Virus record (IMG/VR): IMGVR_UViG_3300032236_001850
Location: 248,001 to 312,000 of that record
DNA: 64,000 nt
Strand: one strand, 5' to 3'
Part shown: positions 34,552 through 50,763 of the stretch, in pieces
How the letters are laid out: the number at the start of each line of letters is the position of its first letter
Numbering within the stretch: the stretch's first letter is position 1
Notes under the pieces: generated by a model
Databases searched by the model: none
The model's input: only the letters and a program-made list of their open reading frames with translations
Told to the model about the DNA's origin: nothing
Made by a program: the position numbers and the translations under genes

Positions 34552-36186
34552 ATGGCAGGTTTTGTAGATAATAATAAACCATCAGAGTCACCGGTTATAC
34601 AGAGGATAAGGGAATCAGTTAAAAAATTGAGTACCTTTGGTATGAAGTATGATGACATGGTAATAAGAAATTCGCAAGCTGTCGGTGTAACTGAAGCTGC
34701 ATTTCTTAACAAGAATAAAGCTAACGTTGAAGACGAAAGCATGCTATGGTCTCTAGCCAAGCAGGATATTACATCCAGACAATTCATAGGTTACTTTGAC
34801 AAGGATTATAAGGGAAAAAGAGATTTTCTAAGAATGTTTTCTTTGAATCCTGAAGTTGAATGGGTTCTTGATACCATTTGTGACGAGGCTATAACATATG
34901 ATCCAGCAAACTTTTTTGCGTACCCAGATTTTATAGATCTTTCCGATGTAAACGAAAAGGTAAAAGACGAGCTTTATGACGTTTATAAGAACCTATACGA
35001 TATATGGGGATTCTCCGATGATATAACAGCATGGCAATATTTTAGACAGTTTATAATTGATGGATTTCTAGCTTTTGAAATTGTTTACGATGACAGCGGA
35101 AAAAATATAGTTGGCTTCAAGGAACTTGATCCTATAACATTAATTCCTAGCGTTGAAAAACAACTTGATGGAAGTTTTGTTAGTACATGGACACAATATC
35201 CGCAAGATCCTAAAAAGAAGCGTACTCTCTACGATCCACAAATAATCTATATCTCATATGCTAAGGGTAACTCCATATCGAGAGTTAGTTACATTGAAAG
35301 ATTAATAAGACCTTATAATATATTAAGAATTATAGAATATACTAGGGTTATATGGTCTGTAATGAACGCTTCATTCAAATTGAAAATGACCGTTCCAATT
35401 GGTACCAAATCTCAACAGAAAGGCATGCAAACTCTGGGTGAACTTATGAGTGTATATAAGGAGGACATACAACTTAATGATGAGAGTGGTGAACTTACAG
35501 TTGATGGTAGACCTAAGATTCAATTTTATAAAAATTACCTTATGCCATCAGGTGTTAATGGTACACCAACAATAGAACCAATTAATACGGAGGGACCTAA
35601 TCTTAACGATCCAGCTCCTCTTACATATTTCTTTGATAAATTCATACTTGAATCTAAGGTTCCACCTTCAAGATTTCATAACCCAGATGGTGGTAGCACT
35701 TCACCATATTCAAATGGAGCTGAAGGTCTAGATAAAGAGGAGATAAGATTTTATAAATTTATTTCTAGACTGAGATCAGTGTTTCAGGAGATATTGGTTA
35801 AACCTATGTGGATACAAATGGTTAAAAAATATCCTCATTTAGAAAAGGATTTTCTTTTCAAAAGTCAACTTGGACTTAATTATTGGTCTGATAATCCATT
35901 TAAGGAAAATCAGGAAATTGGTAAAATGACTCAAAGAAAAGAAACAATTACCGGTCTTGGTGCTCTTATGAACGATGACGGTAAACCTTTCTTCTCGAAT
36001 GCTTTTCTTATAGAGGAATTTTTAGGTATGTCTAAACAAGACATAGCAGCAAACAAAGAGGCTAAAGAAAGAAAAATAAAGGAAAAAGCAGCAGCTGAGA
36101 AAAAAGCAGCAGGAGCAACTGGAGCAGCAGGCGGCGGGGGTAAAAAAGAAGGCGGTGAAGAAAAACCACCACAAGTAACACTATAG
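34552..36186 (+). CDS. gp20: Portal vertex protein, copy 1 (T4 gp20-like)
   Basis: FRQFIIDG, ELDP, SYIERLIRPYN.LRI.E...VIW, KNYLMP, EEIRF.KFI.RLR. Confidence 0.9.
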   Translation: MAGFVDNNKPSESPVIQRIRESVKKLSTFGMKYDDMVIRNSQAVGVTEAAFLNKNKANVEDESMLWSLAKQDITSRQFIGYFDKDYKGKRDFLRMFSLNPEVEWVLDTICDEAITYDPANFFAYPDFIDLSDVNEKVKDELYDVYKNLYDIWGFSDDITAWQYFRQFIIDGFLAFEIVYDDSGKNIVGFKELDPITLIPSVEKQLDGSFVSTWTQYPQDPKKKRTLYDPQIIYISYAKGNSISRVSYIERLIRPYNILRIIEYTRVIWSVMNASFKLKMTVPIGTKSQQKGMQTLGELMSVYKEDIQLNDESGELTVDGRPKIQFYKNYLMPSGVNGTPTIEPINTEGPNLNDPAPLTYFFDKFILESKVPPSRFHNPDGGSTSPYSNGAEGLDKEEIRFYKFISRLRSVFQEILVKPMWIQMVKKYPHLEKDFLFKSQLGLNYWSDNPFKENQEIGKMTQRKETITGLGALMNDDGKPFFSNAFLIEEFLGMSKQDIAANKEAKERKIKEKAAAEKKAAGATGAAGGGGKKEGGEEKPPQVTL

Positions 36187-36190
36187 TAAC

Positions 36191-37843
36191 ATGGCAGGAT
36201 TTTTAGACTTTTTAAAACCCAATCAAGCAGCTTTGGGTAACATACTTAAAAATTTGGGTAGCATATCCAAATTTGGTATGCAGTACGATGACATGGTTGT
36301 TAGAAATTCGCAGGCTATTGGTAGAACCGAGGGTGCTTTTTTCAATCAGGAAGGAACAGGATATACTAAGGATAGCGCATTTCAATGGACAGCTTCGTAT
36401 CATGACACTAAGGTAAGAAAATACATAGCTTATTTTGATAAATCATATGGAGAAAAAAGAGATTATTTAAGAAAGTTTTCCATAAATGGTGAGATAGAAT
36501 TCATACTGGATATCATAACAGATGAGGCCATAGTATATGACGATAGAAACTATTTTGCGCAGCCTTCATTTTCCAATCTTGATCTTAAGGACAAAGTTAA
36601 GGAGAGGGTAAGCACACATTTCAATAGACTTTATAATATATTTCAGTTCCAGAATACAGTATTGGGCTGGCAATATTTCAGACAATTTATAATAGATGGA
36701 TTCTTGGCTTTTGAGATAATCTATGATAATAAGGGAAAGGAGATAATAGGATTCAAGGAACTTGATGCTATTTCTTTACAACCAACGGTAGAAAAAGTTG
36801 GTGAAAATGAATATAAGCAGTTCTGGATACAATATCCAAGTAATCCACAAATGTTTAGAAAACTTACTAATGAACAAGTTATCTACATATCATATGCGAA
36901 GGGTAATACTATATCAAGAACAAGTTACGTTGAAAGACTTGTAAGATCTTATAACATTCTAAGAATTATGGAGAATTCTAGAGTTATCTGGAACGTAATG
37001 AATGCCAGTTATAGAATGAAATTCATAATTCCCATAGGAACACAGTCTCCACAAAAAGCCATGCAAACTTTGGGACAACTTATGTCCAACTATAAGGAAG
37101 AGATTAGCATAAATGATTCATCCGGAGAATTAACAGTAAACGGTAGACCTAAGGTTCAATTCTATAAGAATTATTTATTTCCCGAACAGAATGGAGTTTC
37201 ACCAGAGATATCTTCTCTGAATCCAGCTGGACCTGATTTCAATGTTATGGATAATGTTCTTTATTTCTTCAATAAATTAAAAATGGATTCTAAAATCCCA
37301 TATGCTAGATTTGCTGCAAAAAATGGAACACCTGCTAATTACCAAATAGCAATAGATCAGCTTGAAAGAGATGAAATAAGATTCGAAAAGTTTCTAAGAA
37401 GACTTCGTTCAATATTCCAGGAAATCCTGGTTAAACCACTCTATATACAAATGTGTTTGGAATACCCAGAATTGGCTAAAGATAGAAATTTTAAAACCAA
37501 CATAGGTTTAAATTTTAATAGAGATCTTGAATTCGAGGATCAGGTTGAAATGACTAATCTTAAAAAGAAAAGTGAATTTGTAACTGCTCTTTCAGATTTA
37601 AAGGTAAAAGCTGGGGAGGAGGATGTACCTTATTTCGATAATGACTTTCTGATACAGAGATTTTTAGGTATGTCTCCTGATCAATTGAAATTGAACGAGG
37701 AATACAAGAAAAAAGAGGAAAAAGCCGGAGCTGCACCTCCTGCTGCTGGCGGAGAATCAGCACCCGCTGCCGGATCGGCTGCTCCCGCGGGAGAAACCCC
37801 ACCAGCAGGTGGCGAAGCAAAAGCACCACAGGTAACACTATAA
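36191..37843 (+). CDS. gp20: Portal vertex protein, copy 2 (paralogue)
   Basis: Same motifs: FRQFIIDG, SYVERLVRSYN, KNYLFP, DEIRFEKFLRRLR. Confidence 0.9.
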   Translation: MAGFLDFLKPNQAALGNILKNLGSISKFGMQYDDMVVRNSQAIGRTEGAFFNQEGTGYTKDSAFQWTASYHDTKVRKYIAYFDKSYGEKRDYLRKFSINGEIEFILDIITDEAIVYDDRNYFAQPSFSNLDLKDKVKERVSTHFNRLYNIFQFQNTVLGWQYFRQFIIDGFLAFEIIYDNKGKEIIGFKELDAISLQPTVEKVGENEYKQFWIQYPSNPQMFRKLTNEQVIYISYAKGNTISRTSYVERLVRSYNILRIMENSRVIWNVMNASYRMKFIIPIGTQSPQKAMQTLGQLMSNYKEEISINDSSGELTVNGRPKVQFYKNYLFPEQNGVSPEISSLNPAGPDFNVMDNVLYFFNKLKMDSKIPYARFAAKNGTPANYQIAIDQLERDEIRFEKFLRRLRSIFQEILVKPLYIQMCLEYPELAKDRNFKTNIGLNFNRDLEFEDQVEMTNLKKKSEFVTALSDLKVKAGEEDVPYFDNDFLIQRFLGMSPDQLKLNEEYKKKEEKAGAAPPAAGGESAPAAGSAAPAGETPPAGGEAKAPQVTL

Positions 37844-37931: not shown

Positions 37932-39269
37932 ATGATAGAGAAATTAAAACTTTTTAAAGAGCTTGAATCATTAACAGGCAACGGGTCACAAAAATCAAAA
38001 CAGGATTTAATCAGAAGTAACATTGACGATGAACTAAAGTATATTCTTGATGTTTGCTTCAACCCATTCGTGACAACAAAACTTCATAAGATTACTTTTA
38101 ATGAAACTATATCGGAAAGTAATCATAATCTATGGGAAGATTTTAGATCTCTCTTAGAGGAGCTTAAAACAGCTCCAGCAGCAAACGATTTCCTTAGAGG
38201 TAGAGCAAGCAACCTCATTTCATCAAGAATTAGTGATGATCCCAAAGAGGATCTTGAACTTAGATCCATTTTGATGAAGATCATAACTAAAAGAATGAAT
38301 ATAGGAATCGGTGCTAAATTAATAAACAAAGCACTTTCCTATGAGCTTATACCAGATCCTTCCGTGATGCTTGCTACTGATGACCAGGAAACAATTGAAT
38401 CGTGGAAAAAAATATATTGTGAGGAAAAATATGACGGTGTAAGAGTTATTGCTATATGTAAATCTGGTGAAATCTCATACTTTACCAGGGCTTTCAATGA
38501 GCTTGATCCAACTTGTCTTTCCCGTATTTCTTTCTCGTTAAAAACAGCCATGATTAATAGTGGACAAGGAATATTGGGAGACTGGTTCTTTGATGGCGAA
38601 TTGACAGATCTTAATAGAAAATCGGTAAGTGGTAAGGTGACACAAATACTAAAGGGAACAGCACCTAAAAACATAGATGATAATATGTTATTTAATGTTT
38701 TTGATTTTGAGGAAGTTTCAACACTAACTCATGGATCTGGTGTTCTAGATTATCTTACAAGAAGAGCAACCCTAGAAAAGGTCACTTCTTTCCTTCCTGA
38801 GAATAGTCCGGTAGTTCTTGCTAGAATGTGGGAGCTTGATAATTCTGCGGATGTTACTGAGATTTATAAAAAAATAGTTGCTGATGGTGGTGAGGGTGTT
38901 ATCTGTAAAAGCAACTCGGTTTATGAATGTAAAAGATCTAAAACATGGATCAAGCTGAAAGAAGTTAATGATTGTGATTTAGTTGTTAGTGGATGGTATC
39001 CAGGTGAAGGTAAAAGGGAGGGATTTATAGGTGGTTTCATTTGTACCGATGCATCGGGAACACTGAACGTGAAGGTTGGTTCCGGTTTTACCGATAATGA
39101 TCTTAAAACTTTAAGTGAAACACCGGATCAGCATATCGGTAAAATAATTGCAGTTCAATATAATGTTACGATAGAAGACAAGCATGGTAATAGATCTTTA
39201 TTTTTACCTAGATTTATCGAAATAAGAAATGATAAGGATACTGCTGATGATTTAAGTAATAAATTTTAA
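37932..39269 (+). CDS. ATP-dependent DNA ligase
   Basis: EEKYDGVR, FDGE, FDFE, EGVICK, WIKLK, GSG. Confidence 0.95.
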   Translation: MIEKLKLFKELESLTGNGSQKSKQDLIRSNIDDELKYILDVCFNPFVTTKLHKITFNETISESNHNLWEDFRSLLEELKTAPAANDFLRGRASNLISSRISDDPKEDLELRSILMKIITKRMNIGIGAKLINKALSYELIPDPSVMLATDDQETIESWKKIYCEEKYDGVRVIAICKSGEISYFTRAFNELDPTCLSRISFSLKTAMINSGQGILGDWFFDGELTDLNRKSVSGKVTQILKGTAPKNIDDNMLFNVFDFEEVSTLTHGSGVLDYLTRRATLEKVTSFLPENSPVVLARMWELDNSADVTEIYKKIVADGGEGVICKSNSVYECKRSKTWIKLKEVNDCDLVVSGWYPGEGKREGFIGGFICTDASGTLNVKVGSGFTDNDLKTLSETPDQHIGKIIAVQYNVTIEDKHGNRSLFLPRFIEIRNDKDTADDLSNKF

Positions 39270-39276
39270 TTAATAC

Positions 39277-40221
39277 ATGATACAAGAATTATTAACAGAA
39301 AAGCTCCGACCAAAGAAGCTGGAGCATATGATATTACCATCCAGAATATCAAAGGTTTTTGAAAATGGATTGGGTCAGAATGTTTTATTAAGTGGATCTC
39401 CAGGATGTGGCAAAACTACATTAGCAAAAATATTAGCCTCCCCATTTCCCCATTTATTTATAAATGTATCCGATGAGAGCTCTGTGGAGGTCATCAGAAC
39501 TAAAATAACGGACTTTTGTTCAACTATATCCGTTATGGATGGTAAATCTTCCAAAAAGGTTGTCGTATTGGATGAGTTTGATGGTGCATCTGATCAATTT
39601 TATAAAGCATTAAGAGGAACTGTTGAAAAATATGCAGCAAACACAAGATTCATAGCAACCTGTAACTACATAAATAAAGTTCCGGATGCTATGCAAAGCC
39701 GATTTGAAGTTATTGACTTCAATCCAATAAGTACCTCTGAGGATGAAGCTTTGAAAGGGGAATGGTCGAATAGAGTAAAACTCATTCTTGGTAAGATTAA
39801 CGTTACTATAGAGGAGGAAGCACTTTCTGAATTTCAAAAGAGTTATTATCCAGATTTCAGAGCAGCACTAAATAAGATTCAAGCATGGATGATTGAAGGT
39901 GTTACTAATATAGATTCAGCTAGAGTTAAGGAGTTTGGCTGGTCATATGAACATCTTTACAATTTATTAGTTTCATCTAAGGATCCGGTTAAGAATTACC
40001 AGATGCTTGTCGGTGAATATCAAGGAAAAACTGATGATGTCATGTCAGCTCTTGGCGAAGAGTTCATAAATTGGATAATAAACAATAAACCAGAATTATC
40101 TAAAATTATACCAGCAGTTATCGTTCTCGTTGCTGAACATCAGGCTCAGAGGATCCAAGTAATAGATCCAATGGTTTCTTTGCTATCCTTATTCTTTCAA
40201 ATTCAGAAACTTATAGAATAA
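39277..40221 (+). CDS. gp44: Clamp loader ATPase subunit (T4 gp44/RFC-like)
   Basis: GSPGCGKTT, VVVLDEFD, FIATCNY, QSRF, YPDFR. Confidence 0.9.
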   Translation: MIQELLTEKLRPKKLEHMILPSRISKVFENGLGQNVLLSGSPGCGKTTLAKILASPFPHLFINVSDESSVEVIRTKITDFCSTISVMDGKSSKKVVVLDEFDGASDQFYKALRGTVEKYAANTRFIATCNYINKVPDAMQSRFEVIDFNPISTSEDEALKGEWSNRVKLILGKINVTIEEEALSEFQKSYYPDFRAALNKIQAWMIEGVTNIDSARVKEFGWSYEHLYNLLVSSKDPVKNYQMLVGEYQGKTDDVMSALGEEFINWIINNKPELSKIIPAVIVLVAEHQAQRIQVIDPMVSLLSLFFQIQKLIE

Positions 40222-40742
40222 TGGATAATAAAAGAATTATATTAGTTGGAAAGGGTGCATGTGGTAAAGATTATGCAAGACAACAATTAGAAAATTACGG
40301 CTTTAGATACTGTGTTTCCCATACAACCAGACCTCCTAGGGAAGGTGAAATAAATGGTACCGATTATCATTTTATAAGTTTGGATTCTGCAATACATCAT
40401 TTTATTGCAAAGAATCTGTTTTACGAGTATGTAGAATTTAATGGCTGGATATATGGGACTACCATAGAGGAATTTCAAAAATCTAATCTTTTTATCATGA
40501 CTCCAGGGGGTATAAGTAAATTAAAAACCTTTGATAGGGAGGAATCATGGATAGTCTATATAGATATACCAGAAAACATCAGAAGGGAGAGACTACTCAA
40601 ACGTAACGATGCTGATGATGTCGAGAGAAGATTGGCTGCTGACGAAAAAGATTTTGAAAACTTTACTGATTTTGACGCTAGAATAACTGATCCTAACTTT
40701 AATATAGAAGGTGAATTAAAATGGATAAACTTATCCAATTAA
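40221..40742 (+). CDS. gmk: Guanylate kinase
   Basis: GKGACGKD, VSHTTRPPREGEINGTDYHF. Confidence 0.85.
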   Translation: MDNKRIILVGKGACGKDYARQQLENYGFRYCVSHTTRPPREGEINGTDYHFISLDSAIHHFIAKNLFYEYVEFNGWIYGTTIEEFQKSNLFIMTPGGISKLKTFDREESWIVYIDIPENIRRERLLKRNDADDVERRLAADEKDFENFTDFDARITDPNFNIEGELKWINLSN

Positions 40743-40758
40743 TTAAAAAAAATTAATA

Positions 40759-41913
40759 ATGATAAACATATGTATAGATGGTAATCACCATTTCCATAAA
40801 ACCTTTGGAGTTTTTGCAGGTTATGGAAATCTTGATCCAGGAAAGGTCCTTAAGGAAAAATCGGAACAAGCTGCTTTTATAAGAAAAGTTGCTACTGATC
40901 TTTGTGCATCTCTTAAAATGCTTCCACAAGGTGGAAGAATGATATTTACTGCGGATAGCAGAAGTTGGAGAAAGGACGTTGAGATAGAGGATGGCGGGTA
41001 TAAATCAGGGAGAGTAAAAGATGAAAATGTGGATTGGACTATATTCTTTGAACTTATGGCATCCTTTGGTGAGCAATTAGAAAAAATGGGATTTATATTT
41101 TCAAGGGTTGAAGGAGCGGAGGGAGACGATCTTCTGATGTTTTGGTCCGATTATTTCAATTTGCTTGGTGAAAACTGTTTAATTATAAGCGGGGATCACG
41201 ATATGCACCAATTAGCAAAAATGAATGATAAGGCTTGGACTGCTGTTTGGAATACAAATTCTAAAAAGAATATGCTTTCTGTGCATGGTGGATGGGAGAA
41301 TGAATGGTTGAATAAGAATGAATCTGTTGGAATGAGTATATTTAATATGTCATCCGCAATTTCACCAGAGAAGGATAGATTTAAGGAATTTCTAAAAAAA
41401 GTAAATATAGAAAAAATTGATAGCTACGCTTTTATATTTCATAAGATACTAATTGGTGATGATGGTGATTCTGTTCCTAGTGTTTGGGAATATAAAGTTA
41501 AGGACAAAAATGGTGAAGATAAGGTTGTTAGGTTTACTGACAGTAAAGCAAAGAAAGTTTATTCTGCATTTCTTGAAACTGAATGGATTAATATACCATT
41601 TGATAAACTAATTAAAAATCAGGATTTTCTTAATTGGATAAGCGGTTTAATTCTGAGAACAACTAAAGATCTTGATAGCATGGACAATAGAAAGAAAGTT
41701 TCTAGTAATCTTGAAAGAAATTTAATTCTTATGTGGCTTAATCATAAAGTTATTCCGCAGTTTGTCATTAAGGGTGCATCTCAAGAAATTTTAAGAGGGA
41801 TGGAGATGCAAAAGAAAAATGTTACTCTCGATCGCATAAAAATACTTGAAGGTAGCGAATGGGTAACTTCTGGATATCAACCGAAAGGATTTGATCCTTT
41901 CTCATATTTATAA
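40759..41913 (+). CDS. 5'-3' exonuclease / RNase H (FEN/PIN fold)
   Basis: IDGN, D..SWRK, YK..R, EGDD, SGDHD..QL, ILIGD.GD.VP. Confidence 0.8.
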   Translation: MINICIDGNHHFHKTFGVFAGYGNLDPGKVLKEKSEQAAFIRKVATDLCASLKMLPQGGRMIFTADSRSWRKDVEIEDGGYKSGRVKDENVDWTIFFELMASFGEQLEKMGFIFSRVEGAEGDDLLMFWSDYFNLLGENCLIISGDHDMHQLAKMNDKAWTAVWNTNSKKNMLSVHGGWENEWLNKNESVGMSIFNMSSAISPEKDRFKEFLKKVNIEKIDSYAFIFHKILIGDDGDSVPSVWEYKVKDKNGEDKVVRFTDSKAKKVYSAFLETEWINIPFDKLIKNQDFLNWISGLILRTTKDLDSMDNRKKVSSNLERNLILMWLNHKVIPQFVIKGASQEILRGMEMQKKNVTLDRIKILEGSEWVTSGYQPKGFDPFSYL

Positions 41914-41915
41914 AA

Positions 41916-42338
41916 ATGGAACTTTTTGATATAGTAAAAAATATATTCTCAAAAAATCAAAGAATCTGGGATTCCGTAGGAAAAAACGACAAGACTCGTA
42001 ATTTTTTTATGATCAACAGAATAATGGCTATACAGTTTCCTGTACAAGCAAACCAATTCAACAAAATGAGGGTTACTCCACATTTTGTTGTCGATTGGTG
42101 GAGAAACACATTATCTAATAGATTTTCAAAACCACCAACCTGGATATACACGAAAACAATAAAGAAAGAAACTGTAAATAAAAAAACAAAAACATCAGAT
42201 TATAGCGAAGTTGAAAATTTTATTTGTGATAAATATAAGATATCCAAGAGGGATCTTCTGCAAATAAAGGAATTCTATCCCGATAGATATAATGCCTGGA
42301 TGATTGACGTTGCAGATCAGTTAGGTTTAAAAAAATAG
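41916..42338 (+). CDS. Probable clamp loader small subunit (T4 gp62-like)
   Basis: FMINRIMA...ANQFN...W..K...ICDKYKIS resembles gp62 (FIINR.LS...ANEMN...KW.K...EYYGYS). Confidence 0.5.
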   Translation: MELFDIVKNIFSKNQRIWDSVGKNDKTRNFFMINRIMAIQFPVQANQFNKMRVTPHFVVDWWRNTLSNRFSKPPTWIYTKTIKKETVNKKTKTSDYSEVENFICDKYKISKRDLLQIKEFYPDRYNAWMIDVADQLGLKK

Positions 42339-42349
42339 ATATATAGAGG

Positions 42350-42886
42350 ATGAAAAAGGAAACCGATAAAGTTATTGATAAGATCCTTTCCGGGATGGAT
42401 TGGGATGTTATATTTGAGGTTAATAAATGTTTTAAACATGGTGTCGGTGACGGGGTATCTGTCATTCCTGGTGTTAAAAGAAAAGCATTTGCCGACGGAA
42501 TCACTAAAAATGATTTAAAAAATGAATTAAAAAGTCTCCTTAAGTATGTCATAGAAAACAATATTCCTGAATTAATATACGGTTATTGGATGATATTTTG
42601 GAATAATCCTTTATGGACTGATGAATATCTTGATGAAATCAAGGAAGAAATGGGTGAGGATGAGAGTGATCTAATAGGAGATCTTATAATAGATCCAACA
42701 TTAGAGGTAATATATTCTCCTCAAAGAATGTACATCATAGCTAATAATATAAAAAATCAACAGGAGACTGTAAGTACAGATTCCGATGCTCTTGAGACAA
42801 TGTTAAATAAAGCACTTGGTGATGAAAAATTTGAACTTGCTGCTAAGATAAGAGACGTTATCAATTTGCAGAAGGATCAAAAGTAA
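42350..42886 (+). CDS. Hypothetical protein with C-terminal UVR (UvrB/UvrC) motif
   Basis: LNKALGDEKFELAAKIRDVI. Confidence 0.65.
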   Translation: MKKETDKVIDKILSGMDWDVIFEVNKCFKHGVGDGVSVIPGVKRKAFADGITKNDLKNELKSLLKYVIENNIPELIYGYWMIFWNNPLWTDEYLDEIKEEMGEDESDLIGDLIIDPTLEVIYSPQRMYIIANNIKNQQETVSTDSDALETMLNKALGDEKFELAAKIRDVINLQKDQK

Positions 42887-42901
42887 AATAATAATCTTTA
42901 G

Positions 42902-43381
42902 ATGAAACACATTAAGAGCATATACGAGTACCTTGACGGCGGAGTATTTGGTGACACGTACGGTCTAGGTAGCGGTAACGGTGTTATGAAAGTTAGTTAT
43001 AAACCATATAACGATCTTTCAGTATCCGTTGGTCCTGATCCTAATATAGATAGAACTGTGAAAGGTTCAGAATTTCAGCTTGGTGATGTTGTAGAATCAC
43101 AACCCTTGGATTCTAAGAAAAAGGTTATTGGTGTTATAGTGAGATGTTTCAGAAACCCAGACAATAAGCAATATAGATACTTTATACAAGCTTATTATAA
43201 GGGTAAGAAAAGTAAGAAAATCATAGAAATAAAATCAGATTGTATTAAATTTGCTGAAGGTGGAGATCATGGAAACATGGAAACAATATCAAAATCTAAA
43301 GCAAGTGATATACCAGGATCAGCTTATAATTCTAAAACTGTTTATGGATCTAGTGAATTAGGTCAAGAAAACAACGTTTAG
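42902..43381 (+). CDS. Hypothetical protein, capsid-targeting-like N-terminus
   Basis: MKHIKSIYE|YL. Confidence 0.6.
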   Translation: MKHIKSIYEYLDGGVFGDTYGLGSGNGVMKVSYKPYNDLSVSVGPDPNIDRTVKGSEFQLGDVVESQPLDSKKKVIGVIVRCFRNPDNKQYRYFIQAYYKGKKSKKIIEIKSDCIKFAEGGDHGNMETISKSKASDIPGSAYNSKTVYGSSELGQENNV

Positions 43382-43382
43382 A

Positions 43383-43410
43383 GAAACCAATTCAATCATT
43401 TATAGTACAA
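43383..43410 (+). promoter_or_regulatory. Putative middle promoter GAAAC...AGTACAA
   Basis: Shared motif class upstream of 43427. Confidence 0.45.
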
Positions 43411-43426
43411 ATAAGAAACCCTATAG

Positions 43427-44332
43427 ATGATATTCGGACACAATCAAACAAACATATCGTATCTTGGTATCCCCAAGAAATCAATAACAGTAGACAAGAG
43501 GATATGCTCATATGAGGATATCCTCGATCTTATTTTGGCACTATGCATTGTCAATTCTAAAATATCCTCAAAAATAGTTTGTCTAAATCTTGGTGAACTT
43601 GAAATAACTGGTGAATTCCTGAATTCTGATTTTATAGAGGAGGAAGATCCAATTATATCCGAAAGAATAAACGAGATAAACTCCATAATAAATAAGAACT
43701 CCATGAGAGTTGTATTTTTTATAGGAAAGGATTATTTTTTAGGTAGTCAGCTTGAGGAGGTTAAGGAAAAAACAATAAAAGTTTTAAACAAACTTTCGGA
43801 TGTCCTAGAAGCTATAGGTATGAATGGTCCATCAATTGTTATAAGAATTGGATCAGCATACGGGAACAGAAAAAGAACAATGTCCGAGTTTTGTACCATG
43901 ACCAAGAAGCTGAATTATTCAACAATACAAAGATTGACCGTAATGAATGACGAGAAACCTAGTTTATTCTCTATTACGGATCTACTCTCTGGGGTTTACT
44001 ACGAAACCGGTATTCCTTTATGTTTTAGAATATTACCACATCAATTTAACGACGGTGGTTTAACAATAAGGGAAGCCATGTTTCTTGCAGCTTCAACATG
44101 GAAAGTTAATTCAAAACCTTTCTTTTTTCATTCGGAAGCATCTGATATTGATAGCAATGGTAAAGCATTATCTCCCGAATGTTCAGATTCACTAACTATG
44201 AGAATACCAACATTCGGTCTTGATATTGATGTTATAATCGATTCACCAAGCAGAGAACTTTGCTATCTTGGTTACCTGAAATCCCATAGAGGTTTACCTC
44301 CAACTGTTATTAATAAAATTTCAAAGAAATAA
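43427..44332 (+). CDS. UvdE/UvsE UV-damage endonuclease homologue with degenerate active site
   Basis: IGSAYGNRK, RLTVMNDEK.SLFS, IPLCF, GGL..REA..LA.STW, GLDIDVII follow the UvdE pattern. Confidence 0.7.
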   Translation: MIFGHNQTNISYLGIPKKSITVDKRICSYEDILDLILALCIVNSKISSKIVCLNLGELEITGEFLNSDFIEEEDPIISERINEINSIINKNSMRVVFFIGKDYFLGSQLEEVKEKTIKVLNKLSDVLEAIGMNGPSIVIRIGSAYGNRKRTMSEFCTMTKKLNYSTIQRLTVMNDEKPSLFSITDLLSGVYYETGIPLCFRILPHQFNDGGLTIREAMFLAASTWKVNSKPFFFHSEASDIDSNGKALSPECSDSLTMRIPTFGLDIDVIIDSPSRELCYLGYLKSHRGLPPTVINKISKK

Positions 44333-44335
44333 TTT

Positions 44336-44363
44336 TTATTTCCGTAATTATTGATTATATTTG
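44336..44363 (+). promoter_or_regulatory. Putative early promoter, Bacteroidota-type TAnnTTTG
   Basis: TTATTTCCG then TATATTTG at 44356-44363, upstream of the 3'-5' exonuclease. Confidence 0.55.
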
Positions 44364-44378
44364 GATAAAATTATAATT

Positions 44379-45077
44379 ATGTTCAAACTAGAAACAATAG
44401 AAAATTACCTTTATTTTGATGTTGAAACAGTCTGCTCAGAGAAGGATCTTTCAACACTACAGATTAAAAATCCAAGACTTGCTGAGCTATGGAAAAAAAG
44501 AGCCACTTATTACAGAGGTGCCAATCCTGAGATCTCACAATGGAGTGATGATGATGTATATCTAGCTAAGGCATCACTGGAACCTGAATTTTCTAGAGTT
44601 GTTTGTGTTTCCTTTGGATCTTTTAGTAATGGAGAAAAAGTTTTTAAATCTTTTTACGGAACCGATGAAATAGACATTTTAGAAAAAAGTAACAAAGTTT
44701 TTAATAACGCATTGGCAAAAAATTGGAAATTATGTGGACATAACATAAAGGGTTTTGATGTACCTTGTTTAGGTAAGAGAATGGTTTATAATGGTATAAA
44801 TCCATCTTTAAATTTGCAGGTATGGGATAAAAAACCCTGGGAAATACCTTATATTGATACCTCAGATGTTTTTGCTTTTGGAAGCTGGACTCAACAAAAA
44901 TACCTAAGTCTGGATCTTCTCTCGTGTTCACTTGGTATTAAATCACCCAAAGAAAATATGGATGGCTCCAAAGTTAATGAACATTTTTGGAATAATCAAG
45001 CATATGAGGAGATAAAGGATTATTGCGAGATAGATGTCAGAACAGTCATGGACGTTCTCCAGAAAGTCTGCTTCTAA
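44379..45077 (+). CDS. 3'-5' exonuclease (DnaQ/PolB-exo-like)
   Basis: FDVETV, GHNIKGFDVP, YCEIDV (DEDD motifs). Confidence 0.85.
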   Translation: MFKLETIENYLYFDVETVCSEKDLSTLQIKNPRLAELWKKRATYYRGANPEISQWSDDDVYLAKASLEPEFSRVVCVSFGSFSNGEKVFKSFYGTDEIDILEKSNKVFNNALAKNWKLCGHNIKGFDVPCLGKRMVYNGINPSLNLQVWDKKPWEIPYIDTSDVFAFGSWTQQKYLSLDLLSCSLGIKSPKENMDGSKVNEHFWNNQAYEEIKDYCEIDVRTVMDVLQKVCF

Positions 45078-45095
45078 AAAACAATCAAATACATT

Positions 45096-45132
45096 AAAGC
45101 TTTCCTTGGATATATAAAGGAAAGCTTTTTTT
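45096..45132 (+). terminator. Terminator hairpin whose loop is the late promoter motif
   Basis: AAAGCTTTCCTT-GGATATATA-AAGGAAAGCTTT plus T-run. Confidence 0.7.
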
Positions 45133-45948
45133 GTGGACAAAATATTCAATTTTAATTTATTTATAGAAAATGATGGTGACTCAATTTTTGAAAAGAAAGT
45201 TGGAGCATTCTATCATGATGAATTAAATCCAATTTTCTGGAAAAAGAAAAAGGATAAAAATGGAAATATCGAATGGGTATTCGATCAGCGAGTTAGAAGA
45301 AAACTTTTAAGAATAGCTAACGATTTCTATGAAAAATACTCCGAATTGTTAAAAGGAAGAGTAATAAAGGACATCCAACTAACCGGATCCTTATCTAATT
45401 ATAACTACACTAATTTCTCTGATCTTGATGTACATATCATTGTAAATCTTGATGGTATAGATGACGAGAATCCAAAAATACTTAAGACTGCCATTGATGG
45501 TATAAGATTTGTCTGGAATCTTAGACATAATATATCAATTAGAGGATATGACACCGAACTATATCTTCAGAGTGAGGATGAACCACATGACTCATCCGGT
45601 CTTTTCTCACTATTAAATAATGAATGGATAAAGACACCAGTATTTTCACCGCCTGTAGTGGATGAGATGGATGTGAATAAAAAGTATGGATCCATAGTTT
45701 TTGAGATAGACAAATTACAAACGAAATTAAGAGATCTTTCGGATCTTCCAAGTAATGCCAAGTCTTTATACAAAAGATGTATTAAACTTAAAGATAAGAT
45801 CCAAAAAATGAGGAAAGAAAGCCTTTCTAGAGACGGTGAGATGTCAATTGGTAATCTTGTATTTAAAAAGCTAAGAAATGAGGGATATATAGAAAAATTA
45901 ATAGATACCATATCTAAATCTTACGATAAAATTTACACTGAAAAATAA
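45133..45948 (+). CDS. Pol-beta-superfamily nucleotidyltransferase with capsid-targeting-like N-terminus
   Basis: LTGSLSNYNYTNFSDLDVHI (GS...DxD) and GYDTELY; N-terminus MDKIFNFNLFIE|ND (GTG start). Confidence 0.7.
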   Translation: MDKIFNFNLFIENDGDSIFEKKVGAFYHDELNPIFWKKKKDKNGNIEWVFDQRVRRKLLRIANDFYEKYSELLKGRVIKDIQLTGSLSNYNYTNFSDLDVHIIVNLDGIDDENPKILKTAIDGIRFVWNLRHNISIRGYDTELYLQSEDEPHDSSGLFSLLNNEWIKTPVFSPPVVDEMDVNKKYGSIVFEIDKLQTKLRDLSDLPSNAKSLYKRCIKLKDKIQKMRKESLSRDGEMSIGNLVFKKLRNEGYIEKLIDTISKSYDKIYTEK

Positions 45949-45956
45949 TTTGAATT

Positions 45957-48740
45957 ATGAATATAATTTTACCTAAAGCTGGAAAATATAACATGGGTGA
46001 TGACTTTCCTATGATAAGTATTCCAACTGATATATCATCACTTAACCCAGAGGAAAAAACATTCGATGATTTTCAATGGTGGGCACAAACAAGTGAGTTC
46101 AAAAAGTGGATGGACAAAAATAAGAGAGAATGGCAAGCTGATTCTGAGGATATGTCTAAATATGGTGGTTCAATAACAGATATAATTAAGGAACATGTTG
46201 AATCATACATTCTTGATAATCAATTGAATGAATCTGATGTTCTTTCTTTTAATGAATTTGATACCATTAACGAGGCTGACGAGAATGCTCTTTCTGAGGA
46301 TGCAAAAAAAGGTATTAAATTTCATTATGCTTACAATAAACTCAAATCAGAAGGAAAATTAAAAAATATAACAAATGTTGATGCAGATTTTCCTACTGGT
46401 GCTGAAAAAGCAGTTTTTATAAGTATGGAAGATCAGGAGACTAAAAAAAATATAGATGAGACATTGAAAGCCTTCAAAATGATAGGTTTACAAAGCTCTT
46501 CTGAATCAAAAGTAAAAATAATTTCAGTTACTGAATCTCTACCTGGCGGAAAATTAGATCCTGATACAACTATGCAGGAACTTGTTGAGGGAATGTTAAA
46601 AACAGCTGGTGAATATGCTGCTATTGGTGTTGGTGTAGGTATAGCATGGGCGGTATTAAAAAGAGTTGGTTACGGGGTTAGCGCTGGATATGTTCTTAAA
46701 AAAATAAAAGGCCTTGCTCCTGTAGCCAAGGAAGGCGAGGAAGTGGTAAAAACAACAGGGGCTTTAGCTAAAGCCGGTAAATATGTTAAGGGTCTTGCAT
46801 CCGGAGGTATTAAAAAAGTTAAAGTTCTTGGTAGTGGATTGGTGGATCTTGCTCAATTTAAGAATATAAGAAATGCGGGGGTTGGTGCTTATAAGGGTTT
46901 TACATCATCCTTTAAATTTACTAGAGGTCAATCGTCAGCAACAAGAATAGGAAAGGCTTTATTAAAGGGTAAAAATTTAGGTGCCGAGGGTGCTGTTAAA
47001 ATAGCAACAGAAGCCGGTGCTAAGGGAGCTTCTAGATTTATCCCCTTTGTCGGCGAAGTTCTTTTAGCAATAGACGCCATTGGGTCAACTTTCAACTGGT
47101 TTGGTACAAATCAAGCACCAAAATGGGATGAAATTGAAGGAACTATTGCAACAGGTAAGGGTGGTAAAGAATTCGATCCTGGTAAAATAGCGGATGGTAC
47201 TTCAATTACGATATGCTGGAGACAACCGGCAGGAACCGGTCTTGGTATCGCTGCAAGTTTTGCTTGGAATAATGATACAAGAACAACAGCCGAATTATTT
47301 AAGATTGGTAAGGGTAAGGATGGTGATTCCATATTTATATTAACTGCAATAAATTCTAAGGAATACCAAAAAGCTCTATCCGATCATGCAGTTACGTTAG
47401 TATCCATTAAGAATGGTCCTATAAATTCACAGAGTGGATTTTCAGCATTAAGAAGAATCGTTGATAATGAGGATATGGACGTTAAAGTAGCTTATTTAGA
47501 TACTCCAGATAAGATTGCAAGTAGTTTTAATTTTATGGGTATATGTGACTGGAATCTTCTTATGCAATATTACGATCAGGCATCTGATCAGTATTTAATA
47601 ACAGATAGTAATGCTCCAGAAACATACGAATATTACTATCAGACAGCAAGAAAGGATTATGTGAACGTTTCTGGTAAGCTTCTAAATAATGAAGAATTAG
47701 GTGCAAAAAGTATTACTGATATAGATGAAATATTCGCAGATTCTAATAAAAAATTAAATAATAAAAAGCCTGAGGAGAAAGAAACTGAAAAAAAGAAGGA
47801 AAAACATGTTGTTAATCCTGGAGATAATGGACCACCTAAATACGATGAAAAGAAGCAGGGTGCAACAGGATCTTCTGAGCCTAAGGTAAATGATTCCGAA
47901 AATAACAAGGAACTTTGGATGGTTCCTATGATCTCTGAAGCATCTAATAGTGGTTTAGTTATTCGTAAGTTTTCTGAATTTGAGGATGTTCTTGAATATG
48001 TAAATACCATAGGTAAATACCCGGAACATATGAAAATTAACGAGAGTAAAGGTGATGATGTATTAAGACCGACCGCGGAGGAAGCATCAGGCCCTGCCAA
48101 ACTAGCAGTATATGACGTTACAAGTATGCAATATGCAAACCCTGCAGATAAACAATATACACCAAATGCCTTCAAATACTTCATCATAGGTCCTGATGAT
48201 TTTGATGCCAAAGTTGGATCCAGTATAGAGGTAGGTATTAGTACAGATGAGACCTTAATAGATCCTAGAAGAGGTGTTTATGAATACAAGGAAGAGGTTA
48301 AGAAGAAAGACGAGGAAGAAGGAAAAACGTCAACGAATCCTGAAGAGAATCCAAAACAAAATGACGAAGAATCTGGTGACGACCAAACAAAGCCTAGAAA
48401 GGATGATTACTTCATAACAGCAGATCCTGATGATATAAGCATTAAAAACAGAAAGAATGCTACAGTGATAAGGGATCATAATTTCAAGGGCGGTATAAAC
48501 ATTGTGGACGAATTCCTTACAGATAAGGAAAAAGAAGTTTTAGGAATACCTACATGGAAAGCAATAACATTAGCTAAAACATTCATGAATGGACAAGGTG
48601 AAGTTATAAAAGTTAAGCTTAAAAATAGATATGCTCCTATGTTTAATACTGTAAAAACATATGAAGTTAGGGATGGTGAAGCTTTCCAAATTGCTAAAAA
48701 ATTCGCTAAAGAGGTTGAAGATAGAATAAAATTTCAATAA
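45957..48740 (+). CDS. Large putative internal virion/ejection protein
   Basis: Gly/Ala-rich hydrophobic segments (AAIGVGVGIAWAVL; IPFVGEVLLAIDAIG); several (L/I)NE sites. Confidence 0.55.
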   Translation: MNIILPKAGKYNMGDDFPMISIPTDISSLNPEEKTFDDFQWWAQTSEFKKWMDKNKREWQADSEDMSKYGGSITDIIKEHVESYILDNQLNESDVLSFNEFDTINEADENALSEDAKKGIKFHYAYNKLKSEGKLKNITNVDADFPTGAEKAVFISMEDQETKKNIDETLKAFKMIGLQSSSESKVKIISVTESLPGGKLDPDTTMQELVEGMLKTAGEYAAIGVGVGIAWAVLKRVGYGVSAGYVLKKIKGLAPVAKEGEEVVKTTGALAKAGKYVKGLASGGIKKVKVLGSGLVDLAQFKNIRNAGVGAYKGFTSSFKFTRGQSSATRIGKALLKGKNLGAEGAVKIATEAGAKGASRFIPFVGEVLLAIDAIGSTFNWFGTNQAPKWDEIEGTIATGKGGKEFDPGKIADGTSITICWRQPAGTGLGIAASFAWNNDTRTTAELFKIGKGKDGDSIFILTAINSKEYQKALSDHAVTLVSIKNGPINSQSGFSALRRIVDNEDMDVKVAYLDTPDKIASSFNFMGICDWNLLMQYYDQASDQYLITDSNAPETYEYYYQTARKDYVNVSGKLLNNEELGAKSITDIDEIFADSNKKLNNKKPEEKETEKKKEKHVVNPGDNGPPKYDEKKQGATGSSEPKVNDSENNKELWMVPMISEASNSGLVIRKFSEFEDVLEYVNTIGKYPEHMKINESKGDDVLRPTAEEASGPAKLAVYDVTSMQYANPADKQYTPNAFKYFIIGPDDFDAKVGSSIEVGISTDETLIDPRRGVYEYKEEVKKKDEEEGKTSTNPEENPKQNDEESGDDQTKPRKDDYFITADPDDISIKNRKNATVIRDHNFKGGINIVDEFLTDKEKEVLGIPTWKAITLAKTFMNGQGEVIKVKLKNRYAPMFNTVKTYEVRDGEAFQIAKKFAKEVEDRIKFQ

Positions 48741-48798: not shown

Positions 48799-50763
48799 AT
48801 GTACAAAATGCCAACAACTAAAAAATTAAACGAAGAATTAGTTTTCATTCTAGAAAGACAATCATCCGTTCTTGAATCTTCAAGAAACGATAATGATGAT
48901 TATGTCCTTGAAGGTATTGCTGCTGTTTTCGGTAAAGAGAACAACAATAATAGAATATATGAAGAAGCTGAATATCTTCCTCACTTAAACTATCTTAATG
49001 AGAAAATAGCTCAGAGAAGATTGGTTGGAGAATTGGATCATCCTGAAAAATTTGACGTTTCTCTTAAAAACATTTCCCATATAATCGAAAAACTTGATTA
49101 TGATAAAAATGGAAGAGAAATTAAAATTAAAGTTAGACTTTTAGATACACCAATGGGTCAGATAGCTAAAAATCTTGTTGATGCAGGAGTTCCTCTTTCT
49201 ATTTCTTCCAGAGCAGCTGGTTCTGTTGGTAATGATAAAAAAGTTCAAATTAAAAAAATATTCACATATGACCTAGTTGCTGATCCTGGTTTTCAAGACG
49301 CACAACTAGAAAGAGTATATGAAAGCGCTGGTTATCATTTTAGTGATTTCTTCGAAATGAGAAATAAAAGTGTAACTAACGATCTACTTTGTGTAAATGA
49401 ATCATTAGGTCTAAAAAATGATTCAGATGTGAAGATATATAAAGTTGAAAATAACGAAGAATTTAATAACCTCGTATCAAAATCAGATAAAAATAAGACG
49501 ATCCTCATGGAGAATAATGAATTTGTGACTGCAGAAGAATTAAACCAATATTCTGTTTTCTTGAAAAAAGAGATGGAAGCAATGAATTCTAAAATTGCAG
49601 AAATTAAAGAACAAAAGCAAGTATTAACTGAATCTAGCTTTGAAGATAAAAATTCAAACCTTGAAGAAAGAGTTGCTAAATTAGAAAAATATTCTGAGTA
49701 TTTAGCTGAGAATTTAGATAATGCTATTAAGTATGGTGAATACCTTGCTGAAAACTTAGACGAGAGTATAAGTTATAGCAAATATTTAGCTGAAAACTTA
49801 GATAAGAATATTTCTTATTCTAAATATCTTGCTGAAAATGTTGACAAATCAATTTCTTATACTGAGTACGTTGCTGAATCAACAGATAAAGGTATAGAGT
49901 ACACTAAATATCTTGCTGAGAAATTAGATCAGAACATTCAATACTCTGAGTACTTAGCAGAAAACTTAGACAAAGGTATTTCTTATTCTGAATATCTTGG
50001 TGAGAACTTAGACAAAGGTATAGCTTACTCTGAGTACCTAGCAGAAAAATTAAATGATGGTATCGAGTATTCCGAATACCTTGCAGAGAATCTTAACAAG
50101 AATATCCAATATTCCGATTACCTAGCAGAAAATGTTAATAAAGGTTTAGATTATTCTGATTACTTAGCAGAAAAATTGAAAAAATCAATCTCTTACAGTG
50201 AATATATAGCTGAGACAGTTAATACAACTAAATACAAAGCTACTGACTCATTAAGAGAAAGTGTAGATCTTTCAGCTTCAGCAGGATTAAATGAATCAGG
50301 ATTTGCTGGAGATTATACAGATCTTACAACAAGAATAGATAGTTTGATAGAATCAGTTAAAACACAAAAAACTGAGTCAAATATAAATGAAGCTTCTAAA
50401 TCAATGAAGCAAACAGCCAACACACAAAAGGCAGACGAAGTTCTTAACGAAAATGAGAACAAAAACAAAACAGGTCTTAATTTTATTGACACAATGCCTG
50501 AAGAATACACACAAGTTTGGGAATCACTTACTGAAGGACACAAGCAATCAATTATTGCTCAAAGTAACTTCTATAGATTAGATACACCTTACCAAGTGAA
50601 AAACTTCTGGTCAACACGTCAATTAGGAACTGCACCAGTTGGAGTTCAAAAATTAGACGAGAGCGAAAATATCGCAATGCCTAATGCACAAACAAGCGGT
50701 TATTCTAACGAATATATGAACGCTATTGCTGCTGCATTAGAGAAAAAATTTCAAACAAGATAA
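48799..50763 (+). CDS. gp21: Prohead protease (T4 gp21-like) fused to scaffold/core domain
   Basis: NNNNRIY, GELDHP, ISHII, LDTPMG, SSRAAG, TYDLVADPG; C-terminal coiled-coil repeats. Confidence 0.9.
   Translation: MYKMPTTKKLNEELVFILERQSSVLESSRNDNDDYVLEGIAAVFGKENNNNRIYEEAEYLPHLNYLNEKIAQRRLVGELDHPEKFDVSLKNISHIIEKLDYDKNGREIKIKVRLLDTPMGQIAKNLVDAGVPLSISSRAAGSVGNDKKVQIKKIFTYDLVADPGFQDAQLERVYESAGYHFSDFFEMRNKSVTNDLLCVNESLGLKNDSDVKIYKVENNEEFNNLVSKSDKNKTILMENNEFVTAEELNQYSVFLKKEMEAMNSKIAEIKEQKQVLTESSFEDKNSNLEERVAKLEKYSEYLAENLDNAIKYGEYLAENLDESISYSKYLAENLDKNISYSKYLAENVDKSISYTEYVAESTDKGIEYTKYLAEKLDQNIQYSEYLAENLDKGISYSEYLGENLDKGIAYSEYLAEKLNDGIEYSEYLAENLNKNIQYSDYLAENVNKGLDYSDYLAEKLKKSISYSEYIAETVNTTKYKATDSLRESVDLSASAGLNESGFAGDYTDLTTRIDSLIESVKTQKTESNINEASKSMKQTANTQKADEVLNENENKNKTGLNFIDTMPEEYTQVWESLTEGHKQSIIAQSNFYRLDTPYQVKNFWSTRQLGTAPVGVQKLDESENIAMPNAQTSGYSNEYMNAIAAALEKKFQTR
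49690..50235 (+). repeat. 13 tandem 42-bp (14-aa) coding repeats, consensus YSEYLAENLDK.I.
   Basis: Counted directly in the translation. Confidence 0.9.

What the first reader, a model, noticed from the sequence alone, without database searches (positions are those of the whole stretch)
43427..44332. UvdE homologue with apparent systematic loss of metal ligands (pseudo-enzyme)
Seen versus the family pattern as I recall it: HP.QF -> FIGKDY, IH -> IR, ENDD -> MNDE, D..HH -> RILPHQ, AH.D -> ECSD, EAK -> DSP. The scaffold motifs and the full-length ORF are retained. Known: UvdE is a TIM-barrel nuclease needing His/Glu/Asp ligands for its metal cluster. Inference: a catalytically dead lesion- or modified-base-binding protein that might shield phage DNA or act as a decoy.
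Basis: partly seen in the sequence, partly recalled or inferred. Interest (0 to 1): 0.6.

Follow-up and report, generated by a model that had tools for sequence, protein, structure and literature searches.

The report
Phage UvdE copy without metal site
A giant phage carries, beside a normal UV-damage endonuclease gene, a second well-conserved copy whose metal-binding catalytic centre has been dismantled and partly replaced by arginines, so databases that call it a UV endonuclease are probably wrong about what it does.

The parts
43427..44332 (+). UvdE-derived ORF (301 aa) lacking the trinuclear metal site; complete (beta/alpha)8 barrel
43718..43732 (+). F98-I-G-K101-D102 at the end of strand 3: the first ligand His is replaced by Phe, and the probing finger Q/Y by Lys/Asp
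   Evidence: family column 98 = F53 Y32 L13 S10; columns 101/102 = K90 R22 / D64 E35; canonical = H, then P/H/Q, then F/Y
43844..43870 (+). R140-I-G-S-A-Y-G-N-R148 after strand 4: the ligand His (Tth H143) is replaced by Arg, inside a family-invariant motif
   Evidence: R116/116, G, S, A, Y, G 116/116, N115, R115; canonical column = H93/93
43943..43987 (+). M173-N-D-E-K-P-S-L-F-S-I-T-D-L-L187 at the end of strand 5 and the following loop: the bridging ligand Glu (Tth E175) is replaced by Met; the N-D-[DE]-x-PSLFS-xx-DLL signature is invariant across the whole ligand-less clade
   Evidence: column 173 = M63 T26 V14 L9 against E93/93 canonical; PSLFS is 19/19 in the clade representatives
44015..44062 (+). 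P197-L-C-F-R201-I-L-P204-H205-Q-F-N-D-G-G-L212, strand 6 and loop: ligand Asp (Tth D200) -> Arg (nearly invariant), ligand His (H203) -> Pro, second His (H204) kept
   Evidence: R115 K1; P89 A20; H116/116; canonical D93, H93
44126..44131 (+). F234-H235 at the end of strand 7: ligand His (Tth H231) -> Phe/Ile; H235 corresponds to the canonical Tyr, not to the ligand
   Evidence: column 234 = I75 F33 against H92/93; column 235 = H89 Y27 against canonical mostly Y
44180..44188 (+). C252-S-D254: ligand His (Tth H244) replaced; the position is variable in the family
   Evidence: P45 S18 T14 C12 against H93/93 canonical
44240..44248 (+). D272-S-P274 after strand 8: the only ligand position that keeps an acidic residue (Glu -> Asp/Glu); the conserved Lys is replaced by Pro
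   Evidence: D80 E33; P81; canonical E93, K85
42350..42886 (+). Conserved block neighbour: 178-aa protein with a C-terminal UvrB/UvrC-type UVR motif
   Evidence: Pfam UVR E=0.0011; the orthologue in L089 carries a precomputed PF02151 hit; present in 81/81 loci
42902..43381 (+). Conserved unknown gene immediately upstream (159 aa)
   Evidence: 81/81 loci; no family hit; AF2 model poor, pLDDT 50.7
44361..45077 (+). 3'-5' exonuclease (PolB-exo/DnaQ-like) immediately downstream; in 23/78 relatives a Nei/Fpg glycosylase gene lies between it and the UvdE-like gene
   Evidence: Pfam DNA_pol_B_exo2 2.1e-11 and phrog_25228 8e-36
40759..41913 (+). 5'-3' exonuclease / RNase H (FEN-like) of the same conserved block
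   Evidence: Pfam 5_3_exonuc_N (33.8 bits, just under its 34.3 cut-off) and phrog_107; 81/81 loci
37932..39269 (+). ATP-dependent DNA ligase at the head of the block
   Evidence: Pfam DNA_ligase_A_M and OB_2; 74/81 loci

Best explanation
The ORF encodes a folded, selected descendant of UV damage endonuclease (UvdE) in which the three-metal catalytic centre has been dismantled, along with the lesion-flipping finger and base pocket. It therefore no longer performs canonical UvdE incision; the phage's intact second UvdE does that. The old active-site face is still the functional face. Two former ligand positions are now invariant or nearly invariant arginines (R140, R201), and they sit next to the retained H205, N174-D175, K177 and D272. 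I infer that the guanidinium groups occupy the space and charge of metals 1 and 2, pair with the surviving acidic residues, and form an anion (phosphate) pocket. The most likely role is a non-cleaving factor that binds DNA backbone or DNA ends (a nick, gap or lesion-intermediate sensor or adaptor). It would work within the conserved phage replication/repair block of ligase, clamp loader, FEN-like 5'-3' exonuclease, UVR-motif protein, (Nei/Fpg glycosylase) and 3'-5' exonuclease. Shown: homology, fold, ligand loss, clade-wide conservation, purifying selection, coexistence with a canonical copy, and synteny. Inferred: absence of metal binding, the arginines acting as metal mimics, DNA as the ligand, and the adaptor role.
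Against: There is no direct evidence of DNA binding or of lack of activity. No model coordinates were available, so the orientation of R140 and R201 towards the old metal site is inferred only from their positions at strand ends and from homology. The family pI is acidic (median 5.6), although the canonical copies are the same. The near absence of Arg/Lys exchange at R140, R148, R201, R215 and R259, together with about 20 invariant polar residues, looks more like a precise catalytic or ligand-specific site than generic backbone binding. The loops carrying the new motifs have lower pLDDT (69-78). Expression data could not be obtained.
Confidence: 0.4

Rival explanations
1. Neo-enzyme: the UvdE barrel has been rebuilt into a metal-independent catalyst. 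It would use an Arg/His/Lys/Asp (possibly Tyr) site, for example for phosphoryl transfer or a lyase-type reaction on DNA ends or repair intermediates, or it would act on a nucleotide or sugar-phosphate rather than on DNA.
For: Strictly invariant polar residues cluster after strands 4-6: R140, S143, Y145, N147, R148, N174, D175, K177, S179, S182, T184, D185, Y192, R201, H205, N208, R215 and E216. There is almost no Arg-to-Lys exchange. Omega is very low. The neighbours are enzymes of DNA and nucleotide metabolism, including a guanylate-kinase-like gene.
Against: I know of no precedent for metal-independent chemistry in the xylose-isomerase-like/EndoIV/UvdE barrel superfamily (own knowledge). 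No match to any other enzyme family appeared in Pfam, NCBIfam, PHROGs, PDB sequences or fold searches. Several of these invariant residues are not conserved in the basal subgroups of the clade.
Confidence: 0.3
2. It is still a metal-dependent nuclease, with a smaller mono- or binuclear site rebuilt from other residues (for example D175, E176, H205, H235, E237, D272, C52), so the ligand loss is compensated.
For: D175, H205, E237 and an acidic residue at 272 are conserved in the family. The barrel and its groove are retained.
Against: Two cationic arginines sit in ligand positions and would repel metal ions. The candidate replacement ligands are not conserved: H235 is Tyr in 27 of 116 members, and C52 is I/V in the basal members. 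D175 and H205 are already present in canonical UvdE without being among the eight ligand columns. Canonical enzymes keep all eight ligands invariant.
Confidence: 0.1
3. One reading: a dead lesion- or modified-base binder that shields phage DNA, or a decoy or inhibitor aimed at host repair or defence nucleases.
For: Pseudo-enzymes often act as substrate traps. A neighbouring gene carries a UVR motif of the kind that mediates UvrB-UvrC contact, so some interplay with host excision repair is conceivable.
Against: The lesion-recognition residues of UVDE are not retained. No PADLOC match was found. The gene sits in a core replication/repair block, not in an accessory or anti-defence island, and it is syntenic in all 81 loci. 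No evidence for DNA modification genes next to it was found.
Confidence: 0.1
4. A decaying, functionless remnant of a duplicated UvdE gene.
For: Catalytic residues are lost. It evolves about 1.9 times faster than the canonical paralogue and is the second fastest gene in its block.
Against: The ORF is intact in all 82 copies examined, omega is 0.01-0.09, 34 columns are invariant, the model is confident, and the gene is conserved in phages as divergent as 45% identity.
Confidence: 0.02

Closest known systems
UV damage endonuclease UvdE/UVDE/Uve1/UvsE (Pfam PF03851; structures of T. thermophilus 2j6v and S. acidocaldarius 3tc3/4gle)
   Different: 7 of 8 metal ligands are replaced, two of them by invariant or nearly invariant Arg. 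The probing finger Q/Y is replaced by [KR][DE], and the strand-2 pocket loop (R..SS..P.S) is lost. A segment of about 27 residues after strand 1 is missing. It fails NCBIfam's UvsE equivalog cut-off. It forms a separate clade seen only on phage contigs, which coexists with a canonical UvdE in the same genomes.
Endonuclease IV (Nfo/Apn1), the sister three-metal TIM-barrel nuclease
   Different: A much weaker match than to UVDE. Endonuclease IV keeps all its metal ligands and cleaves at abasic sites; here the site is absent.
Catalytically inactive PHP domain of E. coli-type DNA polymerase III alpha (analogy recalled from my own knowledge, not tested here)
   Same: A barrel domain that ancestrally held a trinuclear metal site and lost several ligands. 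It persists under selection with a non-catalytic role next to a DnaQ-type 3'-5' exonuclease.
   Different: An unrelated fold family, and a domain of a polymerase rather than a free-standing protein. No interaction between the UvdE-like protein and the neighbouring exonuclease was tested.
Other ligand-poor UvdE-like proteins found in the same search (P0322/P0324, P0384, P0276, P0286)
   Same: UvdE homologues with several ligand columns replaced.
   Different: They fall inside the canonical part of the tree, so they are independent losses. They lack the R140/R201 pair and the PSLFS signature.

Membership tests
UvdE (PF03851) as a homologous superfamily member | Significant match to the family profile above the curated threshold | tested here: met
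   55.3 bits against a cut-off of 24, E=7.7e-15, but only profile positions 83-241 of 275
UvdE (PF03851) as a homologous superfamily member | UVDE-type (beta/alpha)8 TIM barrel | tested here: met
Functional UV damage endonuclease (UvsE equivalog) | Score above NCBIfam TIGR00629 equivalog cut-off | tested here: not met
   50.3 bits against a cut-off of 124.45; the genome's canonical paralogue scores 170.9
Functional UV damage endonuclease (UvsE equivalog) | Eight His/Glu/Asp ligands of the three-metal site (Tth H101, H143, E175, D200, H203, H231, H244, E269) | tested here: not met
   F98, R140, M173, R201, P204, F234 and C252 replace seven; only D272 stays acidic. The canonical columns are invariant in 92-93 of 93 representatives
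Functional UV damage endonuclease (UvsE equivalog) | Probing finger (Sac Q103/Y104; the aromatic residue is required for activity) | tested here: not met
   K101/D102 in the query; the family has K/R and D/E; canonical representatives have F/Y at the second position (PMC3553973)
Functional UV damage endonuclease (UvsE equivalog) | Undamaged-base pocket loop after strand 2 (Sac L65, S67; canonical R..SS..P) | tested here: not met
   The canonical R, P and Ser columns are replaced or variable in the clade (C/I/V, D/E/S, P/Q/S/N); only the hydrophobic position is kept
Functional UV damage endonuclease (UvsE equivalog) | Mn2+/Co2+-dependent incision 5' of CPD or 6-4PP | not testable with these tools
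   Needs a biochemical assay
Pseudo-enzyme (non-catalytic homologue kept by selection) | Homology to an enzyme family with loss of the residues essential for its chemistry | tested here: met
Pseudo-enzyme (non-catalytic homologue kept by selection) | Maintained under purifying selection | tested here: met
   Omega 0.01-0.09 for pairs with dS 0.05-1.0; 0.05-0.08 for the query against its four nearest relatives
Pseudo-enzyme (non-catalytic homologue kept by selection) | Demonstrated absence of any catalytic activity | not testable with these tools
   A new metal-independent activity cannot be excluded computationally

The most novel reading that the evidence does not exclude
The clade is not dead. 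It would be a new, metal-independent DNA-processing enzyme built on the UvdE barrel, with an Arg140/Arg201/His205/Lys177 (plus Tyr or Asp) active site in place of the three-metal centre. For example, it might clean or cleave blocked 3' or 5' ends left by the adjacent Nei/Fpg-type glycosylase. That would be the first metal-free catalyst in the EndoIV/UvdE/xylose-isomerase-like superfamily.
Probability: 0.2. Interest if true: 0.85.

Novelty: new variant of a known kind. Interest (0 to 1): 0.58.

Why it matters
There are four reasons.

1. Annotation. Hundreds of proteins on huge-phage contigs are labelled 'UV DNA damage repair endonuclease' by automatic pipelines (names), although they lack the catalytic centre. 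Counts of phage UV-repair capacity based on Pfam hits are therefore inflated.

2. Enzyme evolution. This is a clean natural example of a trinuclear metal site being replaced stepwise by arginines while the barrel is kept, with a basal subgroup that still retains one ligand histidine. It is useful for studying how metal sites are lost or converted.

3. Phage biology. The protein is a fixed component of a replication/repair gene block in a widespread clade of Lak-related huge phages, probably infecting Bacteroidota. It coexists with a true UvdE, so it points to an uncharacterised step in phage DNA repair or replication.

4. Chemistry. If the protein turns out to be catalytic, it would define a new chemistry for this fold.

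Tried and rejected
- **Ligand list from papers.** I tried to take the Tth UVDE ligand list from the primary literature. Protein Sci 2009 (doi 10.1002/pro.54, PMC2760361) is not held, and the SacUVDE paper gives no residue list. I defined the ligands instead from invariance in 93 canonical representatives and checked the numbering through the mutant PDB entries.
- **Phage database outgroup.** The only hit in the phage genome database (LR756502, 31% identity) is a canonical UvdE, not a clade member.
- **PADLOC.** No defence-system match.
- **Promoter and terminator scan.** Nothing above chance: 25 promoter-like sites found against 27.8 expected.
- **Upstream gene 42902-43381.** The model was too poor to search with (pLDDT 50.7).
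- **Co-variation among block genes.** A crude partial correlation of identity profiles is not phylogenetically controlled, and I do not use it as evidence.
- **Origin of the clade.** The tree does not resolve duplication of the phage's own UvdE against separate capture, because the branch is long and the root is only at the midpoint.
- **Complex prediction.** Not run. The report makes no binding claim, and gene adjacency alone is not sufficient reason.
- **Model coordinates.** None are exposed, so the side-chain geometry of R140 and R201 could not be inspected.
- **Genetic code.** No alternative genetic code was needed or used.

Full report
**What is at the coordinates.** Window 43427..44332 (+) is a single intact ORF of 301 aa with an ATG start. 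It sits in a run of same-strand, tightly packed genes. The window is part of a complete 434,509-bp virus record with direct terminal repeats. The record has T4-type hallmarks: large terminase, sheath, two gp20-type portals, a gp21-like prohead protease, gp23 capsid protein, UvsX, a DnaB-like helicase and gp46/47-like SbcCD. Its capsid protein is closest, at 44-45% identity, to Lak megaphages and other 'huge phages'. G+C is about 33%, and no tRNA genes lie in the window.

**The ligand columns, defined without relying on memory.** An exhaustive profile search of 1.84 billion representatives returned 1033 hits at E <= 1e-3. I aligned the best 150 and tabulated the candidate columns. In 93 full-length canonical representatives eight columns are invariant or nearly so: H, H, E, D, H, H, H, E (92-93 of 93), followed by a Lys in 85 of 93. 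They correspond to Tth H101, H143, E175, D200, H203, H231, H244 and E269, the ligand set I recall from the TthUVDE structure paper and from the homologous endonuclease IV site (own knowledge). The numbering was checked. PDB chains carry a 21-residue tag, and the E175A and K229L substitutions can be seen directly in the mutant chain sequences aligned. The entry titles name these mutants ('UVDE E175A', 'UVDE K229L', 'UVDE K229R'); the pairing of sequence rows to entry codes in the tables does not agree with those titles, so I rely on the sequences and titles and not on the codes. The SacUVDE paper states that the enzyme needs Mn2+ or Co2+ and uses three-metal catalysis (PMC3553973).

**What the query has in those columns.** It has F98, R140, M173, R201, P204, F234, C252 and D272, so seven of eight are replaced and the last is conservatively kept. 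The trailing Lys is P274. Each residue lies at or just after the C-terminal end of a predicted strand (strands 3 to 8), where TIM-barrel active sites sit, and this supports the alignment. Three independent alignments agree. H205 is the retained second His of the canonical 'D..HH' motif, not the ligand. H235 aligns with the canonical Tyr that follows the ligand His, and it is Tyr in 27 of 116 family members, so it is not a compensating ligand.

[quoted passage not shown] L65 and S67 build the pocket for the two flipped purines (PMC3553973). The query has K101/D102 at the finger (family: K/R and D/E; canonical: F/Y at the second position). The conserved strand-2 loop residues of canonical UvdE (R, SS, P, S) are replaced or variable. 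The family also lacks about 27 residues that follow strand 1 in canonical proteins.

**This is a family trait, not an accident of one genome.** A word-based search found 202 relatives of about 300 aa at 45-100% identity. A degenerate-pattern scan found 148 viral contigs that encode a relative. In 116 aligned members the former ligand columns read as follows:
- column 98: F/Y/L/S
- column 140: R in 116 of 116
- column 173: M/T/V/L
- column 201: R in 115, K in 1
- column 204: P/A
- column 234: I/F
- column 252: P/S/T/C
- column 272: D/E

New invariant motifs surround them: R140-x-GSAYGNR148, N174-D-[DE]-K-PSLFS-x-TDLL187, P197-x-CFR-x-LPH-x-FN-x-GGL212, R215-E-A and R259-IPTFG264. Invariant positions are twice as frequent on the C-terminal face of the barrel as elsewhere, 27% against 12%.

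**Selection.** All 82 copies recovered from viral loci are intact ORFs of 292-310 aa. Nei-Gojobori dN/dS is 0.01-0.09 for pairs with dS between 0.05 and 1.0, and 0.05-0.08 between the query and its four closest relatives. The higher values all come from pairs with dS above 1, where the estimate is saturated. Between the same pairs of complete genomes the protein diverges about 1.9 times faster than the canonical UvdE. It is the second fastest gene of its block, with median identity 49.7%. So it is constrained, but less so than the true enzyme.

**A canonical copy coexists.** The same genome encodes a second UvdE at G000:C1:389742-390554: 317 aa, 184 bits over the whole profile, all ligands, and it passes NCBIfam's UvsE equivalog cut-off at 170.9 against 124.45. 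The window's protein fails that cut-off at 50.3 bits. Five of five other complete relatives (289-430 kb) also have exactly one canonical and one divergent copy. The ligand-less copy is therefore not the phage's UV endonuclease.

**Phylogeny and range.** In a maximum-likelihood tree of 112 sequences, 25 ligand-less proteins form one clade (SH-aLRT 99), separated by a long branch from all canonical UvdEs. The phage canonical copies form their own clade (100) among other canonical sequences, including that of megaphage LR756502. The basal subgroup of the ligand-less clade (P0254-type, 247-268 aa) still has His at column 140 but already has R201, I173, I234 and D272. A second subgroup has R140 but N201. 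This fits stepwise remodelling after a single origin, but the root and the donor are unresolved. Two other ligand-poor lineages (P0322/P0324, P0384) and three partial ones lie inside the canonical part of the tree and are independent events. A pattern scan of 185,579 species genomes found only two clade members. Both lie on contigs that carry the phage gene block, and one is binned with a Saprospirales MAG; the other two hits are canonical UvdEs. As far as sampled, the clade is restricted to phages, and the hosts are probably Bacteroidota.

**Genomic context.** In 81 of 81 loci with flanks, all the block genes that the locus covers lie in the same order: DNA ligase, RFC-like clamp loader, guanylate-kinase-like protein, FEN/RNase H-type 5'-3' exonuclease, an unknown 140-aa protein, a protein with a UvrB/UvrC-type UVR motif, an unknown 159-aa protein, the UvdE-like protein, a PolB-exo/DnaQ-like 3'-5' exonuclease, a phrog_36119 protein and a large low-complexity protein. 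The block is wedged between the portal genes and the prohead protease and capsid genes. In 23 of 78 loci, and in the deeper lineages L086 and L089, a Nei/Fpg (NEIL1-like) glycosylase gene is inserted between the UvdE-like gene and the exonuclease. In the window's genome Nei/Fpg lies elsewhere. Even the basal subgroup keeps the exonuclease downstream. The context is DNA replication and excision repair, not anti-defence (no PADLOC hit).

**How it most likely works.** Shown: a UvdE-fold protein without the metal ligands, the finger or the pocket; conserved; selected; co-resident with a true UvdE; and embedded in a repair and replication block. Inferred: with Arg in two ligand positions, metal binding at sites 1 and 2 is implausible. 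The arginines probably pair with the surviving D175 and D272 and, together with H205 and K177, form an anion pocket where the scissile phosphate used to sit. I therefore favour a non-cleaving factor that binds DNA backbone or DNA ends and hands repair or replication intermediates to the neighbouring nucleases and ligase (confidence about 0.4). The strict invariance of many polar residues, with almost no Arg/Lys exchange, keeps a metal-independent neo-enzyme as a serious rival (about 0.3). Decay is excluded.

**Comparison with what is known.** Reviews list UvdE among the sporadic repair genes of jumbo phages (PMC7824862). The GOS survey noted many viral UVDE homologues (PMC1821046). In five full-text searches I found no description of a ligand-less UvdE paralogue. 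Automatic annotations call these proteins UV damage endonucleases. It is a member of the UvdE homologous superfamily, but it fails every tested functional criterion of the enzyme. It is best filed as a new, phage-specific, metal-site-free variant: a pseudo-enzyme or a neo-functionalised paralogue.

**Limits.** The ligand identities rest on invariance plus recalled literature. dS is saturated for distant pairs.

Noticed in passing
window 34552-36186 and 36191-37843: Two tandem T4-type portal (gp20) genes, 49% identical over their full length. A duplicated portal is unusual and suggests a hetero-oligomeric or alternative portal.
   Followed up: partly
window 37932-48740: A block of replication and repair genes (ligase, RFC-like clamp loader, guanylate-kinase-like, 5'-3' exonuclease, UVR-motif protein, UvdE-like, 3'-5' exonuclease) is wedged between the portal genes and the prohead protease and capsid genes. 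The order of the genes covered is the same in all 81 related loci.
   Followed up: yes
L063:6887-7696, L079:6926-7720, L086:5935-6744, L089:5777-6577; own genome G000:C1:425783-426130 (L091): A Nei/Fpg (NEIL1-like) DNA glycosylase gene lies between the UvdE-like gene and the 3'-5' exonuclease in 23 of 78 relatives and in deeper lineages. In the window's genome it is about 130 kb away.
   Followed up: partly
window 42350-42886: A 178-aa protein whose C-terminus matches the UvrB/UvrC interaction (UVR) motif. It is conserved two genes upstream of the UvdE-like gene and could contact host excision-repair proteins.
   Followed up: no
G000:C1:389742-390554 (L001:1489-2442): A canonical, ligand-complete UvdE paralogue lies directly after a Toprim/topoisomerase-II-like gene (L001:19-1440).
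   Followed up: yes
proteins P0322, P0324, P0384, P0276, P0286: Independent UvdE-like lineages with partial or extensive ligand loss fall inside the canonical part of the tree. P0324 lies on a phage-like contig next to DHFR and methyltransferase genes. Loss of the metal site has happened more than once.
   Followed up: partly
window 45957-48740 and 48799-50763: A 927-aa low-complexity (K/E/G-rich) protein with no family match lies directly upstream of an unusually long (654-aa) prohead protease. It may be a scaffold or internal head protein.
   Followed up: no
window 58194-59600: An asparagine-synthase-like gene (glutamine amidotransferase plus Asn_synthase domains) sits among structural genes; it is either an auxiliary metabolic gene or a modification enzyme.
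   Followed up: no
L098 (CALAZP010000278.1, 70 kb) and L097 (CALAYS010000242.1): Contigs carrying this phage gene block are binned into bacterial MAGs, one labelled Saprospirales. This is likely mis-binning, but it hints at a Bacteroidota host.
   Followed up: partly
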